From Oikopleura dioica (taxonomy: Eukaryota; Animalia; Chordata): a stretch of 64,000 nt of DNA. The stretch spans positions 4,712,001 through 4,776,000 of the forward strand of contig OU015568.1 in NCBI GenBank assembly GCA_907165135.1, written 5' to 3'. The translations under genes and the position numbers were made by a program. Shown piece after piece: positions 9,598-58,991 of this stretch. Position 1 is the stretch's first letter. Each line of letters opens with the position of its first letter. A model generated the notes under the pieces. That model saw only the letters and a list, made by a program, of their open reading frames with translations, did no database searches and was not told the DNA's origin.

Positions 9598-10631
9598 TCA
9601 GCCAATTTCTTCAAGTCGGCGAAGAACCAGATCAGCTGGAGGGCGATATTTTGGATCCTGATCGAGCATTTGCTCTACCAGCGCTTTCAACTAAAAGCAA
9701 TCAATAGAGAGACGATTGGGCTTTCGACTTACCGGTCCAGAAACATCGTCTAGTCTCCTTGTGTCAAAGTTAGCGCTTTGAACGGCCAAATGAACAGAAT
9801 CACCTTTCAACCAAACGGAATCAAAAGGACCTTCGAGATAAACCAGCGAGTACAAAATGCATCCCACCGACCAAATATCTGTAGCAGTAGTGATACTCTC
9901 ACCCACCGGGACAGCCAAGAGTTCTGGTGCTCGATAAGGGAGTGTGCACCTTAATCGCAATTAACAACGCGCCGCCCCTAAGGTTCAAACCTTTCAGAAG
10001 CAAGATCTTCGAGAGTTTGCGCCTCCTTCTTTGTCGAAATCTTGACAGTGGCCTCTGCTAGACTTCCAAGGTCGCATATGACTGGAATATTTCCCTCTCC
10101 CAGGAGGATATTCGCCGGTTTGAGGTCCCGATGAACCATCCCTGCTTCGTGGATTGCATTGACTCCTTCGACGATGCCTCTGAAGAGTCGTACGATTTCG
10201 TTGAACTTGAGCGTTTTTCCCTCTCCCTTGAGTTTTTGGTAATGATCCCAAAGCGTTCCTTTGTCGAAATATTCTAGTACCAGCCAAACTTCGGAATACG
10301 GTGATTTCTTGACCACCTCAAATGACCGGCATTTGATGATGTTTTTTGAAGATAAACTCTTAAATTCCCCATTTTACTTTCTCCTTAATGTTTTTTTTCG
10401 ACAAACCTGAGTAGCTTTAGCTTCATCAAGTGCTTCCTTCTCCGACTTTGAGTCGTGGCAGATTATTCTTTTCAAGGCATAGAACTTTCCATCCTTGATG
10501 TTTTCAATTTCGTCGACATAGCTGAACGCTCCCTCCCCAAGTTGACGATGCTTGATGTATTTTTCCCCAGCGATTACAGTGACACCCACTCCGCACAAGG
10601 TTGAGCCGATTCGAGACAGTGCCTTACCCAT
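9598..10631 (-). CDS. STK16: Serine/threonine kinase 16 (NAK family), 4 exons
   Basis: MGKAL (myristoylation Gly2), [69 protein letters not shown]. Confidence 0.92.
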
Positions 10632-53179: not shown

Positions 53180-55412
53180 TCAAGAAAATCGAATAAAAGC
53201 GTATGATTTTGCAGGGATTTGAACAGGCAGCGTTTTAGTAACAAACATTTCCGTCGGATCAACTGTGTTCGTCAAGGGAAGCTCGTTTCCATTCAGAAAT
53301 ACGACTGAGCTTTGATCGTCGGGCGAGGACATTTTCCAAATGTCGACTTCAAGGTCAAACAAGCCATTGATATTTTTGATTTCGATCGGCTCGTCTCGAT
53401 TGAAATTGATAGCAAGGAGGACTGTTTCATTTTTCTTGTTTTGGTGCGCGTAAAGATGCAATTTTTCATCCCCTGAATTTCAATAAAAACCAATCTCGAA
53501 AGTGATAAAAACCTGAGTGAAGAACATCATGGACAAATTCGCCCATCAGCGAATTGAACAAAACAGTTCCCCAGAAATCTGGATTGATAGAATTCTCCCC
53601 GTTCGTTCTCTGTAACAGACCGTAGTTTCCTCCGATGAGGGTTTGTCGACAATAAGCATCGTGCTTGTACTGGGCGAAGATGCCAAGCTGATCTGAACGT
53701 TTTTTTTTGGAGATTTTCGGGAGAAAGGGAAGTGCTTACCGAGGTACCACCGGTGGGACATGAAACGATTGGTTGTCGTATTTTGACCGCTGTTGAAGGC
53801 TCCGCCGGTTTCGCCCATCCAGAGCTCTTTATCTCGACCATGCTGTCTTTAGTTTCAGACTTTGCTAAAACCTCACACCCTGTAAATTTTTGGAAAAATC
53901 ATTTGAAAACTATTCCTGACGCTGCCATAAATTCACAATTTCCAATCTCTCCTTGATCTCCGTCAGCGTAAAATTCTCATTATTCACATTCGGAATAACT
54001 TCATCACTTCTTCCTGCTCCAAGTGGATACCAATGCCAAGCAACTCCATCCCAGCCGTCGTATTTTTCGATGAATTCGGTCATAAAAATATATTCCCAAT
54101 TTCCTGATAACGTCAAGATCTTCATTCTTCCAGGCCCAAAGACTTCATCAAGCTCTTTTCTCAACAGAGCATAATCTTTCGCTGCGTTTTCGGGAGTAAA
54201 ATGAGCATCGCCAGTTTTGACTCCCCAAACTTCATTTCCCAATTCGAAGCCGTAGAAAAGATCTTCTTTTCCCTGGTTTTTGATGTATTCGAACAGAGCT
54301 CTTGCGTTTGCAGAGTCCCAGTCGCCCTCCCAAATTGTCGGTCCAACAAGTGTCCGGCCAAATTCAGCTGAAAGATCGAACACGAGCTTTTTCTTGTTCC
54401 GCTCCGCAAAGTCCATTAGAATATCAAATCGGCCACCAGGGAGGCAGGCTTTTCCAAAGCCGGAAAAACTGCCGTCTGAAAATTTTTCATTATGTATTTA
54501 CATTTAAGCTCAAGTCGTTTAATTTTTATTGACCACCAATCAACAAAAATTGATGTCAAAACGAGAAAACATAAAAAAGGGAAAAACAAGAAAGCGAGTG
54601 AAAAATGTAATTTTCAACTAAAGATATTTGATCGATGAGAAATTCAAAAAGATCAAGATCAAGCGCTTCCCAAATATATTCGCGCTGGCAAAATATACCG
54701 AGAAATATTCAACCGACTTCTTTTCGAAGCAGAGTAACCGACTCTCCTGTGAGCTATTCAAGAGAATCTCAAGCTTCTTCTTCAGGTTTTCAAAATTATT
54801 CTGATTTTCTACAATTCTACAATTTAATATTTCATAGATGAGCTGGAACAGATTGTGGGTCAGCTTCAAAGTCGTGTTTTGAAGCTTGAAGCTCAGGTTA
54901 AAACACTCATCGCGAAATCGGAAGCGGAAAATTCGAAGCCATCTCAAAAGAAAATAAAAAACAAAAAGAAGAAAAGCAGAAAGCTTTGCCGTATCTGTTG
55001 AAATTATTTAATACAAATCTTCAAAGAGAAAATTTATTCAATGAAGACTACCTGGATAACCATGTCCCACCCAAGGAAAGTAACAAAGCGGATCTGTCGG
55101 GTCATTTGGATCAGGGCAAGTGCAAGACCCCCAAGTCGTCGATCTATCAGCAGTGTCGACTTCCACGTGATCGCAAAGCGTTCCTCCAACTCTCAGTAAA
55201 GATTCATTTCCAAGCATTTTTGTCGCATTGTTCAAAAGCTCATCTTCAAAATCAAGATCCATGAGTCCCATCTCCACCCAGCTGCAATTCCCATAGTCGC
55301 ATTTCTCAGAAGGCCAGAAATCAAGAGTTTGACAAGTGTAAGAATGCTTCTCTGAAGGCAAAACATGCAAAACTGTCGAAGTAACGTTGAGAAAAACTGG
55401 CAAAAGAGCCAT
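53180..55412 (-). CDS. Glycoside hydrolase family 79 (heparanase-like / beta-glucuronidase), plant-type sequence
   Basis: QTLDFWPSEKCDYGNCSW, LRVGGTL, FELGNE (acid/base), LWMGETGGAFNSG (nucleophile), YCRQTLIGGNYGLL, NPDFW. Confidence 0.9.
54635..54956 (+). CDS. Small 2-exon gene (89 aa, Ser/Arg-rich plus coiled coil) nested antisense in a GH79 intron
   Basis: Exon 54635-54785, GT..AG intron 54786-54837, exon 54838-54956, phase-consistent. The product ends DELEQIVGQLQSRVLKLEAQVKTLIAKSEAENSKPSQKK*. Confidence 0.55.
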
Positions 55413-55612
55413 CTTTTCAAGCGATTCTGAGAGAAATGAGGCCAGAAAGAGTTGGCGAACTTTGTGAAATTTACTCAAGAAGGGAGTTTCATATTTGAAA
55501 ATCAGTAAAATGAAGCACTAAACAAGCCATTGCTTAAATTCACTTTCAATAGTCATCTTTATTGTTAGAATTATTATGAGTATGAACCCAAGAGTCAAAA
55601 TTTTCTTTATCC

Positions 55613-58007
55613 ATGCCAAGAATGAAGATTTTGCGATTCTTGTTTTTACGGTCATTTCGAACATATTTGATCAAGTCGATAAGATTTGGACAGATCTTTG
55701 TCTCTACCATTTTATAGGATTTTTAAAAAGGAGAAAACTCGAGTTTTTGTCGAAGAGGATTCATTTATGAGGGTCTCAACGCATCCAAAAGAGTTGTCAA
55801 GAAAAAGCGTCGAGAAATGGCTTCAGATATTTATAAAAAGGTTGAAGAGAGAAACAACTCTGACTGACTTGGATAGATTAATTTTGTCTGTTGAAAGAAT
55901 GGATTTCGAAACAAATGAGTCTGCTGATTGGGACGAAGTTATTTTCAAAAATGGAAGAGGGATGGCAGCTGTCGAAAAATGGGACATTAATTCTACTCAG
56001 AGAAAAATCCTAGGATTTTTTAACGCTTGGTATGGAGGAGAAAAAATCAAGCGATCTCAACTGAGAGCGGAAACTGGAAACTGGTTCCTCGAATCTTCCC
56101 TCTCTCATAAATTGATTTCGATTGGGGGTGAGGCAATCGTCCTGGAAGATAACTTCGGAATTCTGGAAGTTGCTGTTCGTGTTCAAATTTTTGACCCAGT
56201 GCTTTTTACGAAAAATGGTGAAGAAGTTTCGTATGAAATTCATCTTTCATCAGGTGAACCAATACTGTCTCAGATTATTTAACATGAATCGTAGATTACG
56301 AAATCGCAGTAGATGATGCAGAAACCGAAAAGAACGTTATCCCTGTTCATGAAAACGTGATTAAAAACTTTGTGAATATTGAGATCTTCTCGGCAATCGA
56401 CGAAATGAAAGAAGATTGTTTAGGCTGGATAACAATAATGGAAAAATGTGACTCAAATTTGAGAAAACGATTGAAATCTGAAGATCTTAGTTTTGAAGAA
56501 AGAAAAAGAATTGCAATTGGGGTTCTGACTGGAGAGAAGTATTTGAATAGTATTGGCATCGGTCATTACGATAAGAAACCAGGGAATATCCTTTTAAAGA
56601 ATGGAGAGCCGAAATGGATAGACTTTGGCCTGGTGGAGGAAAGAACAGGAAGAAAAAGTTATAGAGAGATGGGATACGTAAGAAGAGGAAGCAAATATAG
56701 GCATCATAAATATTTACGTTAGTTAAAACACTTTAAAAAAAAAACTTACGATTTATTTGAGGGTCTGGGTCAGCTGGATTTTCTTTGCTCTCTCAGCTTT
56801 CGATTCATAAGTGCAGAAAGAATTACGCCGAAAAAAGAGGTAGGTTATTTTTAAGAAAATTATATTTTTCAATTCACTTAAGCTGGATCTGTTCGATTTT
56901 CCTCTGTTAACGAAATTACTTCTGTATTAAAATCGAAAAGTAATGAGAGAAGCATTTATATTTTTATTTTATCCGATTGGAAAACAGCGTGGACCTTGCA
57001 TTTCAATCCTATCGAACCAGATGAAAGAAACGAGCTCGAGGTAAATTCGGTCCTTTTGGGAAATATGCATCGTATTAAGATTTATAAATATCGAGGGCTT
57101 ATAAATGATGACACAACTATCGATGAAATACAGAAGCTGTCAAGTTTGATTTCTTTAAAGAATGCTCCATCAGACTTCTGTCTTGACGATCCGAACTTAA
57201 CGAAATCATCCGCTGTAGCTTATTTAAAGCCGAATATGACAAAATATTTCGAAACTTTCGAATATCTGACAAACCATGTTCCTGATCAAAAAGATACGAA
57301 CCTCTGTGTCCCGATCTCAGTTACCCTTCTTTTACGATGGGCGCTGAAAAATGATGTAGATTACGATCCGATAGAATCCGCTTTTACTTTCGAAAACATA
57401 TTTACCGCACTGACAATGGTCATTTATCCTCGAAGCTTGGCTGGACTCAATCTTAACCCAAAAAATGACGAAAAAGACTATCAGTACAACGATATTGAGA
57501 TGCTTTTAAGATGTCTGAAATATGAGACTTGCTTTAGAAAAAGTGGATGGTATATACTTAAACAACTAGGCGGTCTGGATATTGGAAGTTTTAACTATGA
57601 AACAGGTAATAATGAATAACCAAGTATCAAGATCAATCTCTTCAGTCCTTCTACACAATAATTTCGTCTTTGACCGCCCTTTGACTGTTACATGTGCCTA
57701 TCTGGAGCCCGAAGAAGAAAAACCTTTCTTCCACCAAATGGTTCTCGACCGCGTCGAAGGAGAGGAATACGTTCTTCAAAACACTCTTCTTTCTCATTCT
57801 CCTTCTCGAATTCGAATCTTTGTTCAAAACCGCTACTACGCCAATTACGAAATGATGGATGATTGTTTGCAATCTTATGGGGCTTTCGATTACCACGGAC
57901 CGAACGGAGAATTTCTTCAACTTGCTAATGAAACATGCGGAAACATGATTACTCGCCAGTGGTATCTTTTTCCTCAGGCCTACTCAATAACTCTTACTAA
58001 ATCTTAA
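55613..58007 (+). CDS. Divergent protein kinase fused to a C-terminal papain-like cysteine protease domain
   Basis: Kinase: ISIGGEAIV, VAVR, IMEKCDSNLRKRL, HYDKKPGNILL, WIDFG. Protease-like: PDQKDTNLCVPIS and FFHQMVLDRVEGEEYVLQNT. The exons join without frameshift. Confidence 0.8.
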
Positions 58008-58991
58008 TTCAGACCGTTAAAGAGACTGTCTGACAATTGTCTATTGACAATCGATAGCGACAGATTTCCGTTTTTGAAATTATAGATTCTTCAATCAACC
58101 GGGCTCAAAATCCAAACATATGACCTCTTTTACTCCGAAATGCTGTATTTATTGTCTGAACGTATTATAAAAATCATTGATGCTGTCAAGATGATCTCAT
58201 TTTGGCTTCCATGAATTTCTTCTTAATTAATTACTGAATAAATAACGAGAGCCAGACCTTGATAAGGCTTCGGTCGTTGCATTTTGTTTCCTCTAGTCAA
58301 GAGATTCATTTTTGCGATTTGGCTCATCAGCTGTTGAAATTTCTTTGTCTCTACATATCTCTCCACAAATTTCGCCATTGTTTGGTCATCATATTGAGCT
58401 TGTACTAACTTTTCTATGTTCTCAAATTTTCTTCATAAAAACGACAAAATCACTTTTGAAAACGTTCCGAAATTGCTAGAAACAAAAATTGGGCAAAAAT
58501 CTTCATCCTATTTTTAAGTGCTCTTTGTCTTTTTTGTTCTTTGGCAGGGTATCTTCCTGGTTTCTTTTTTATCTGGCAGCTGGTTAATTATTAACTTGAT
58601 AACCTGTCAAATAATTTGAAGACATGGGTTCTCCTTAATAACTGCTATCTGGTAGAAGAAAGGTCTAATGGCGGTCAGCATGGTGCCAAATTAGTTACAG
58701 TTTCGACACATTTTTGGATATTGCTTTTCTATTACAACCATGGAGAATAAAAAAGGCTTCTTTTCTCTCTATTATTTTAGTACTGGAAGGTGCTTCCTTT
58801 GCTAAGTATTCTCAAGGATAATTTGAATAAAGCAGTTGGCTAATGATTAAAGTTAAGACATGTAAGATTATTTAACGACAGGAGTTTAGCATTAAATAAC
58901 TTTGATTCAGAAAAAAATTCTTGATTTTGAATAAAAATTTGAATTTTTTTTTATTTGCATTATATAAAAAGAAATAGTCAAAAATAGCAGT

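What the first reader, a model, noticed from the sequence alone, without database searches (positions are those of the whole stretch)
55613..58007. Kinase-papain-like protease fusion with intact catalytic geometry: candidate undescribed signalling or defence module
Seen: after an atypical kinase domain (G-loop SIGGEA, beta-3 VAVR with Arg in place of Lys, HYDKKPGN, DFG) comes a domain with Q-K-D-T-N-L-C (Gln 57287, Cys 57305) and H-QMVLDRVEGEEYVLQ-N (His 57732, Asn 57780). Established: papain has oxyanion Gln19 and nucleophile Cys25 (Q-x5-C), and His159 and Asn175 (H-x15-N) on a beta hairpin. Both spacings are matched exactly, with hydrophobic strands after His and before Asn. There is no signal peptide or propeptide, so the protein would be cytosolic. 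The gene is intact and more AT-rich than the housekeeping genes, and it sits in an accessory region. From memory, similar kinases form a large unannotated Oikopleura family. Inference: a phosphorylation- or nucleotide-gated intracellular cysteine protease, perhaps for innate immunity, cell death or as a selfish element.
Basis: partly seen in the sequence, partly recalled or inferred. Interest (0 to 1): 0.88.

Follow-up and report, generated by a model that had tools for sequence, protein, structure and literature searches.

The report
Kinase fused to papain-fold protease
This is an intact, deeply diverged copy of a large gene family, so far seen only in the tunicate Oikopleura dioica and in marine metagenome fragments, in which one protein joins an unusual protein-kinase domain to a cysteine-protease domain of the papain fold; I found no published description of the combination, and its function is untested.

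Summary
The motifs are at the stated coordinates: Gln 57287, Cys 57305, His 57732, Asn 57780, plus HYDKKPGN, DFG and VAVR. They lie in one + strand gene of 5-6 exons with GT-AG introns, encoding about 660-720 aa.

The gene is colinear with about 40 O. dioica 'unnamed' proteins. Fourteen of the 16 members that cover all 12 sites keep the full kinase set and Gln/Cys/His/Asn.

An AlphaFold model of a paralogue's C-terminal domain puts the Cys at the start of a helix, with His and Asn on a beta hairpin. All 50 best solved-structure matches are papain-fold (clan CA) cysteine peptidases (Z up to 9.7). Other structure libraries point to C39-like peptidases, not papain's own family C1. No Pfam or sequence link to any peptidase family exists.

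The kinase has the kinase fold (nearest RIPK/IRAK/RLK, weakly). It has Arg for the beta-3 Lys, a weak G-loop, no APE motif and no predicted alpha-C helix.

One exon encodes both the end of the kinase and the protease Cys box, so the fusion is real.

Gating, immunity and selfish-element roles are untested. Expression of this copy was not seen.

The scan has met this family before, on other DNA of the same genome.

The parts
55613..55650 (+). Uncertain.
   Evidence: It joins in frame through a GT-AG 67-nt intron, but nothing in the paralogues aligns to it. Alternative starts are ATG 55767, or ATG 55576 in another frame.
55718..56253 (+). Exon encoding the N-terminal helical region and the kinase N-lobe. 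It holds the degenerate G-loop SIGGEA (56118-56135) and the beta-3 VAVR with Arg (56169-56183). The first homology-supported Met is at 55767.
   Evidence: It aligns to paralogue N-termini from 55746/55767 onward.
56295..56717 (+). Exon encoding the kinase core: HENVIKNF (beta-4), the catalytic loop HYDKKPGN (56564-56587), DFG (56621-56629) and a basic activation segment MGYVRRGSKYR.
   Evidence: Pfam Pkinase E 3.1e-10, 40.3 bits against a cut-off of 31.7. Family conservation.
56762..56839 (+). Small exon encoding the P+1 loop equivalent (SGSAGF...). It may end at 56810 if the alternative intron 56811-56940 is used.
   Evidence: The alternative removes a 28-aa insertion that is absent from all paralogues and from metagenome contig L001.
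56883..57605 (+). One uninterrupted exon running from the kinase C-lobe (SDWKTAW, 56972-56992), through the conserved flexible linker (DDPNLTKS, 57185-57208), into the peptidase Gln 57287 / Cys 57305 box, the helical sub-domain and the YPRSLAGLNLNP loop (57425-57460).
   Evidence: It shows that both domains are on one exon.
57646..58007 (+). Last exon: the beta sub-domain of the peptidase, with His 57732 and Asn 57780 on a hairpin, the C-terminal WYLFPQAYS strand and the stop codon at 58005-58007.

Best explanation
The locus is an intact, probably functional member of an Oikopleura-restricted multi-copy family. One polypeptide carries four parts:
1. A helical N-terminal region.
2. A very divergent eukaryotic-type kinase-fold domain. 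It keeps the catalytic-loop Asp/Lys/Asn and DFG, but has Arg at the beta-3 Lys position, a degenerate G-loop and no APE motif.
3. A sequence-conserved but probably flexible linker (DDPNLTKS ... NLTKN-type motifs).
4. A clan CA (papain-fold, C39-like) cysteine peptidase domain with Gln494, Cys500, His629 and Asn645.

Shown: the architecture, the fold assignment, and the co-conservation of both residue sets.

Inferred: the C-terminal domain is an active cytosolic cysteine peptidase or isopeptidase. The kinase-like domain, more likely a nucleotide-binding regulatory module than a conventional kinase, controls or targets it in cis. The conserved linker just before the Gln/Cys box may be a candidate auto-inhibitory or self-cleavage segment.
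For: Gene model and fusion:
- The introns are GT-AG, and one exon spans the kinase C-lobe and the Cys box.
- The protein is colinear with about 40 O. dioica proteins; the best match is 42% identical over 713 aa.
- Metagenome contig L001 has the same domain order.

Fold:
- In the AF2 model of the paralogue's domain (pLDDT 74.6, core mostly 85-97), the Cys sits at the N-terminus of a helix. His lies in a strand and Asn follows the next strand.
- All 50 best VIA matches are clan CA peptidases: Der f 1 Z 9.7, cathepsin B 9.0, PCAT1 8.8, ATG4A 8.3.
- In AFDB clusters, the matches after the paralogues are bacterial 'Peptidase C39-like' models, E 4.9e-4.
- The ESM Atlas gives C39, C39_2, C10, C1 and Mac-1 both by shape and by features.

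Constraint:
- Fourteen of the 16 members that cover all sites keep RHDKNDFG plus QCHN.
- This copy sits on a long, deep branch, yet keeps 127 of 152 family-conserved positions.

Kinase:
- Pfam Pkinase matches above its cut-off.
- The full-length model has pTM 0.80, and its best matches are RIPK/IRAK/RLK at Z 12.8.

Population: five DNA runs from two studies hold the gene.
Against: - No enzymatic or expression evidence exists for this copy. No RNA run holds it, and the reads laid on it came from paralogues only.
- The model coordinates could not be read, so the Cys-His-Asn distances were not measured.
- The model is of a paralogue 45% identical to this copy, not of the window's own protein.
- Z scores of 8-10 are only a little above the tool's stated background of 7-8; the case rests on the uniformity of the hits.
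- There is no sequence-level link to any peptidase family.
- Arg at beta-3 and the missing alpha-C helix argue against ordinary kinase activity.
- Papain-fold enzymes also include deamidases, acyltransferases and transglutaminases.
Confidence: 0.6

Rival explanations
1. The C-terminal domain has the papain fold and is active, but it is not a general protease. It would be a deubiquitinase or ubiquitin-like-protein isopeptidase, or a deamidase or acyltransferase, working on a modifier or on one specific target that the kinase-like domain recruits.
For: ATG4A (Z 8.3), UfSP (8.0, 7.7) and the ZUFSP family (7.4, 6.7) are among the structural matches. There is no propeptide or signal peptide, as in cytosolic isopeptidases. 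An earlier unverified scan note reports a paralogue with a UBA domain.
Against: C1 and C39 peptidases score higher than the isopeptidases. No UBA or ubiquitin-related Pfam domain was found in 7 long paralogues. No ubiquitin-binding feature was identified.
Confidence: 0.22
2. Both enzyme-like domains are catalytically dead scaffolds (pseudokinase plus pseudoprotease), kept for binding only.
For: Arg replaces the beta-3 Lys, the G-loop is degenerate, there is no APE motif and no alpha-C helix is predicted. No activity data exist.
Against: Gln/Cys/His/Asn and HxD...N/DFG are kept in 14 of 16 complete members and on this long branch. Dead enzymes usually lose such residues. The exceptions are rare (P0119 Cys to Ser, P0043 Asn to Thr, P0100 Asn to Ser) and include a garbled gene model.
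Confidence: 0.1
3. This particular copy is an unexpressed relic, a young pseudogene whose frame is still open.
For: No RNA run among those listed holds its words, and no read matched it over its full length. It is a singleton on a long branch. It may carry a 28-aa insertion in the activation segment.
Against: About 2.1 kb of coding sequence is open across 5-6 exons with intact splice sites. 127 of 152 family-conserved positions and all catalytic residues are kept after deep divergence. The RNA runs laid may be of another O. dioica lineage, which could not be tested.
Confidence: 0.08

Closest known systems
Peptidase C39 and C39-like domains (PF03412, PF13529; e.g. the peptidase domains of PCAT1 and ComA)
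   Same: Both have the compact papain fold. The Gln lies six residues before the Cys, which starts a helix, and His and the third residue sit 16 apart on a hairpin (C39 spacings recalled from memory). These are the nearest shapes in AFDB clusters, the ESM Atlas and Foldseek PDB, with VIA Z 8.1-8.8.
   Different: No Pfam match even at E 10. The third residue is Asn, not Asp. The domain is larger (about 225 aa against 130-150), with an extra helical sub-domain and a family-specific YPRSLAGLNLNP loop. It is eukaryotic and fused to a kinase, not to an ABC transporter. No double-glycine leader substrate is evident.
Papain family C1 (Der f 1, cathepsin B, xylellain)
   Same: These give the highest VIA Z scores (9.0-9.7). 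The catalytic residue types and spacings are the same (Gln-x5-Cys, His-x15-Asn).
   Different: Identity is 6-12%. There is no PF00112 match; the only trace is one paralogue's E 0.037 to Peptidase_C1_2. There is no CGSCW or NSW motif, no propeptide, no signal peptide and no disulfide pattern.
IRE1 and RNase L (a kinase or pseudokinase fused to a C-terminal effector enzyme)
   Same: This is an analogy of design. A kinase-fold module lies N-terminal to a hydrolytic effector domain in one chain. IRE1 chains head the Foldseek list for the full-length model.
   Different: The effector here is a cysteine peptidase, not a KEN RNase. The IRE1 alignments have rmsd above 20 A, so only the kinase part is shared. 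Nucleotide-driven activation is not shown here.
IRAK / RIPK / Pelle-RLK kinases, and beta-3-Arg pseudokinases such as KSR (the latter from memory)
   Same: The best structural matches of the kinase part are ScRIPK, IRAK3 pseudokinase, IRAK4, SOBIR1 and IRAK1 (Z 12.2-12.8). It has a non-RD catalytic loop and Arg at the beta-3 position.
   Different: The margin over other kinases (Z 11-12) is small. Sequence similarity to any solved kinase is E 6e-5 at best and limited to beta-4 through DFG. There is no death domain or receptor part.

Membership tests
Clan CA (papain-fold cysteine peptidases) | The nucleophile Cys is at the N-terminus of the central helix, with an oxyanion Gln a few residues upstream. 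| tested here: met
   In the AF2 model of paralogue P0035:16-297, Cys62 starts helix 62-78 and Gln56 lies six residues before it. This copy has the same motif at 57287-57307.
Clan CA (papain-fold cysteine peptidases) | His lies on a beta strand and Asn/Asp on the neighbouring strand of a hairpin in the beta sub-domain. | tested here: met
   His192 lies in strand 188-200 and Asn208 directly follows strand 203-207. Both are conserved in the family.
Clan CA (papain-fold cysteine peptidases) | The overall fold superposes on solved members. | tested here: met
   All 50 best of 48,161 chains are clan CA peptidases, Z 5.8-9.7, with 118-179 residues aligned.
Clan CA (papain-fold cysteine peptidases) | Cys-His ion-pair geometry and measurable catalysis. 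| not testable with these tools
   Model coordinates are not exposed by the tools, and no biochemical data exist.
Family C1 (papain) | A match to PF00112 and the C1 motifs (CGSCW around the Cys, N-S-W after the Asn). | tested here: not met
   No PF00112 hit at E up to 10. The sequence reads SNLCVPIS and LQNTLL.
Family C1 (papain) | A signal peptide and an inhibitory propeptide. | tested here: not met
   A kinase domain precedes the peptidase on the same exon. No hydrophobic N-terminus is seen in this copy.
Family C39 / C39-like | A match to PF03412 or PF13529. | tested here: not met
   None at E up to 10 in six family members. Only shape-level similarity exists. One paralogue carries the automatic name 'Peptidase C39-like' in AFDB.
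Family C39 / C39-like | A Cys/His/Asp triad. | tested here: not met
   The third residue is Asn in 34 of 37 family members.
Eukaryotic protein kinase superfamily | A Pfam Pkinase match above the gathering score, with the catalytic loop HxDxKxxN and DFG. | tested here: met
   40.3 bits against a cut-off of 31.7. HYDKKPGN and DFG are present and conserved. Kinase fold at Z up to 12.8.
Eukaryotic protein kinase superfamily (catalytically competent members) | A beta-3 Lys paired with an alpha-C Glu, a GxGxxG loop and an APE motif. | tested here: not met
   Arg is at beta-3 in 34 of 35 members. The G-loop is IGGEA. PGF...Q stands in place of APE. No alpha-C helix is predicted between beta-3 and beta-4.

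The most novel reading that the evidence does not exclude
The family could be a larvacean-specific intracellular sensor-executioner system. An IRAK/RIPK-like pseudokinase would sense a ligand, nucleotide or phosphorylation state and release a fused C39-like cysteine protease, possibly by self-cleavage at the conserved DDPNLTKS linker. The system would serve innate immunity or regulated cell death in an animal that has lost much of the usual immune toolkit, and it would have diversified into 40 or more paralogues under conflict-type selection.
Probability: 0.15. Interest if true: 0.85.

Novelty: new variant of a known kind. Interest (0 to 1): 0.6.

Why it matters
Both folds are textbook, but I found no description of a kinase and a papain-fold peptidase joined in one chain. 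Here the combination is expanded to dozens of copies in a chordate with a very compact genome. If the peptidase is active and is controlled by the kinase-like module, this would be a new way of wiring proteolysis to nucleotide or phosphate signalling, comparable in design to IRE1 and RNase L. It would also be a candidate for lineage-specific immunity or cell-death machinery. The peptidase domain would define a new clan CA family. All of this is directly testable with recombinant protein and activity probes.

Tried and rejected
- RNA support for this copy: reads from three bulk runs and one single-cell RNA run of the same species label matched only 30-40-nt conserved stretches and ran on into paralogue sequence. 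They gave no joints, so the splice model is not confirmed by RNA. No indexed RNA run holds the locus.
- Sequence links of the C-terminal domain: Pfam at E up to 10, PDB sequences by profile, phmmer against 1.8 billion representatives and a family-profile search found nothing outside the family. The Kunitz-repeat protein P0149 is a chance match to the linker.
- Foldseek against PDB, Swiss-Prot models and viral models gave no significant hit. C39 domains were on top at only E 0.06.
- Viral or mobile origin: no viral fold match, no flanking direct or inverted repeats and no second copy in the window.
- UBA or other extra domains: none in 7 long paralogues.
- Josephin/UCH idea: my initial guess, from the look of the His motif, was dropped because no such chain appears among the 50 best matches listed.
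- An upstream hydrophobic first exon like that of one paralogue subfamily: no significant match.
- The window's own spliced protein could not be folded or searched whole, because it has no single reference. A paralogue was modelled instead.
- Literature: five searches found no description.

Full report
**What is at the locus**

Reading 55400-58200 and translating all frames shows a + strand gene with very short introns. My model has these exons: 55613-55650 (uncertain), 55718-56253, 56295-56717, 56762-56839, 56883-57605 and 57646-58007. All introns are GT-AG and 40-67 nt long. The model gives 719 codons with a single stop at 58005-58007.

SIGGEA is at 56118, VAVR at 56169, HYDKKPGN at 56564 and DFG at 56621. 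Gln is at 57287, Cys at 57305, His at 57732 and Asn at 57780.

Two details of the model are open:
- Nothing in the paralogues aligns upstream of about 55746-55767, so ATG 55767 is the first supported start.
- My model carries 28 residues in the activation-segment region that no paralogue has. Metagenome contig L001 also has the shorter family length there. A GT-AG intron at 56811-56940 would remove them in frame, and with the 55767 start that gives 661 residues.

Neither point touches the domains of interest.

**The fusion is real**

The exon 56883-57605 (or 56941-57605) is one open stretch. It begins in the kinase C-lobe (SDWKTAW), runs through the linker, and continues into the Gln/Cys box and the helical half of the C-terminal domain.

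The protein is colinear over its whole length with about 40 'unnamed protein product' entries of Oikopleura dioica. The best match is P0177, 42% identical over 713 residues.

A 9.5-kb marine metagenome contig (L001) has kinase exons followed by C-terminal-domain exons in the same order. It also has short introns.

**The family**

phmmer against 1.8 billion representatives gave 56 hits. Those I looked up were O. dioica proteins or unnamed short metagenome fragments, apart from one chance match to a Kunitz-repeat protein. A word-indexed search and a family-profile search listed only O. dioica proteins and metagenome fragments.

Of the 16 sequences that cover all twelve sites, 14 (this copy included) carry Arg(beta-3), H-D-K-N, D-F-G and Q-C-H-N together. 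Exceptions are rare. P0119 has Ser for the Cys and a garbled C-terminus. P0043 has Thr for the Asn, and P0100 has Ser.

In a maximum-likelihood tree this copy is a long, deep branch outside the two large young clades. The tool warns that its placement beside P0136 may be a long-branch artefact. Even so, it keeps 127 of the 152 positions that are at least 90% conserved in the family. That argues for purifying selection on both domains.

**The C-terminal domain**

It has no Pfam match and no PDB sequence match.

I could not submit the window's spliced protein as one reference. I therefore modelled the paralogue P0035:16-297 (45% identical to this copy) with a 42-row family alignment that included the two window pieces. 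The model has mean pLDDT 74.6. The core, residues 60-282, is mostly 85-97.

The Cys is the first residue of a 17-residue helix. The His lies in a long strand, and the Asn directly follows the next strand of the hairpin.

The structure searches gave these results:
- An exhaustive VIA-align search of 48,161 solved chains returned clan CA cysteine peptidases in all 50 top rows. These include Der f 1 (Z 9.7), xylellain (9.6), cathepsin B (9.0), PCAT1 C39 domain (8.8), ATG4A (8.3), staphopain, UfSP and IdeS.
- Foldseek against PDB was not significant, but C39 domains were on top.
- AFDB clusters gave the O. dioica paralogues first. One of them is automatically named 'Peptidase C39-like domain-containing protein'. 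Bacterial C39-like models followed, at E 4.9e-4 and probability 1.0.
- The ESM Atlas gave C39, C39_2, C10, C1 and Mac-1 clusters, both by shape and by language-model features.

The fold is therefore papain-like. The nearest shapes are C39-like, and at the sequence level the domain is a new family. As far as I recall, C39 peptidases share the Q-x5-C and H-x15-(D) spacings, so the 'exact papain spacing' does not single out papain.

I could not read the model's coordinates, so the Cys-His-Asn distances remain unmeasured.

**The kinase**

Pfam Pkinase matches above its cut-off, but only from beta-4 to DFG. The best PDB sequence hits (CDK9, p38-gamma, DAPK1, TTK) are at E about 1e-4.

A full-length model of P0177 has pLDDT 77.8 and pTM 0.80. 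It gives a kinase fold whose best matches are ScRIPK, IRAK3 pseudokinase, IRAK4, SOBIR1 and IRAK1, at Z 12.2-12.8. Other kinases score 11-12, so the assignment is weak.

The domain has these unusual features:
- Arg is family-wide at the beta-3 Lys position.
- The G-loop is IGGEA.
- PGF...Q stands in place of APE.
- The activation segment is long and basic.
- No alpha-C helix is predicted between beta-3 and beta-4.

Many structural alignments start at residue 39-40. This raises the untested possibility that the conserved N-terminal helix fills the alpha-C position.

I read the domain as a nucleotide-binding regulatory module or an atypical kinase. It does not look like a conventional kinase.

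**The linker**

The segment just before the Gln/Cys box is among the best conserved in sequence. It carries DDPNLTKS and, in most paralogues, a second NLTK motif. Yet it is modelled with pLDDT below 50, both in isolation and in the full-length protein.

A conserved linear motif next to a protease active site is a candidate auto-inhibitory or self-cleavage segment. This is inference only.

**Localisation**

This copy has no evident signal peptide under any of the three possible starts. About ten paralogues of one subfamily begin with a 20-residue hydrophobic segment followed by basic residues. Some members may therefore be membrane-anchored.

**Expression and population**

Five DNA runs from two studies hold 86-100% of the locus's sampled words. 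No indexed RNA run holds them.

Reads from three oligo-dT runs and one single-cell run of the same species label matched only short conserved stretches, in both the kinase and the peptidase exons. They continued into different sequence. This means paralogues are transcribed, but this copy was not seen.

I could not test whether those RNA runs come from the same O. dioica lineage as the window.

**Context**

There is no second copy in the window. I found no flanking repeats and no viral fold match. The GC content is only slightly below the window mean. Nothing supports a mobile or selfish element at this locus.

**Literature and earlier notes**

Five full-text searches found no description of the family or of a kinase-papain-fold fusion.

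The scan has already met this family several times on other DNA of the same genome. Those follow-ups reached the same architecture. My tests here agree with them and add the following:
- The C39-like placement of the peptidase domain.
- The deep position of this copy in the family tree.
- The open points in the gene model.
- The conserved, disordered linker.
- The missing alpha-C helix.

**Verdict**

The fusion and the papain fold hold, but the domain is not a member of family C1, and the gating, immune and selfish-element roles are untested.

This is a new variant of known kinds and is worth biochemical follow-up.

Noticed in passing
Paralogues P0177, P0176, P0181, P0178, P0187, P0185, P0200, P0194 (not in the window): One subfamily starts with a roughly 20-residue hydrophobic segment (MLEFSILAILATCIAGMI...) followed by basic residues. 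This is a possible signal anchor that the window's copy and the other subfamily lack.
   Followed up: partly
window 56811-56940: A possible 130-nt GT-AG intron. Splicing it out removes a 28-aa insertion in the kinase activation-segment region that no paralogue has. Both readings stay in frame.
   Followed up: partly
window 57725-57757 (reads of runs X4-X6): An expressed paralogue shares the FFHQMVLDR stretch but then reads D-D-S-T-N-E-Y-V-I-H-(N/K). Its His-Asn hairpin would be two residues longer, so the H-x15-N spacing is not fixed in the family.
   Followed up: partly
window 10026-10238, minus strand: A weak protein match (35% over 71 aa) to the kinase core of this gene, presumably an unrelated protein kinase gene.
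   Followed up: no
P0201 (O. dioica protein, not in the window): A family member annotated with a fucosyltransferase domain (PF00852) after the kinase. This is probably two merged gene models rather than a real fusion.
   Followed up: no
P0149 (not in the window): A 510-aa protein of six Kunitz-type repeats hit the linker motif APSDFCL..PN six times. I take this as chance similarity to the start of the Kunitz domain.
   Followed up: no
L001:3008-5829, minus strand: The metagenome contig that carries a family member has a multi-exon M14 carboxypeptidase gene next to it.
   Followed up: no
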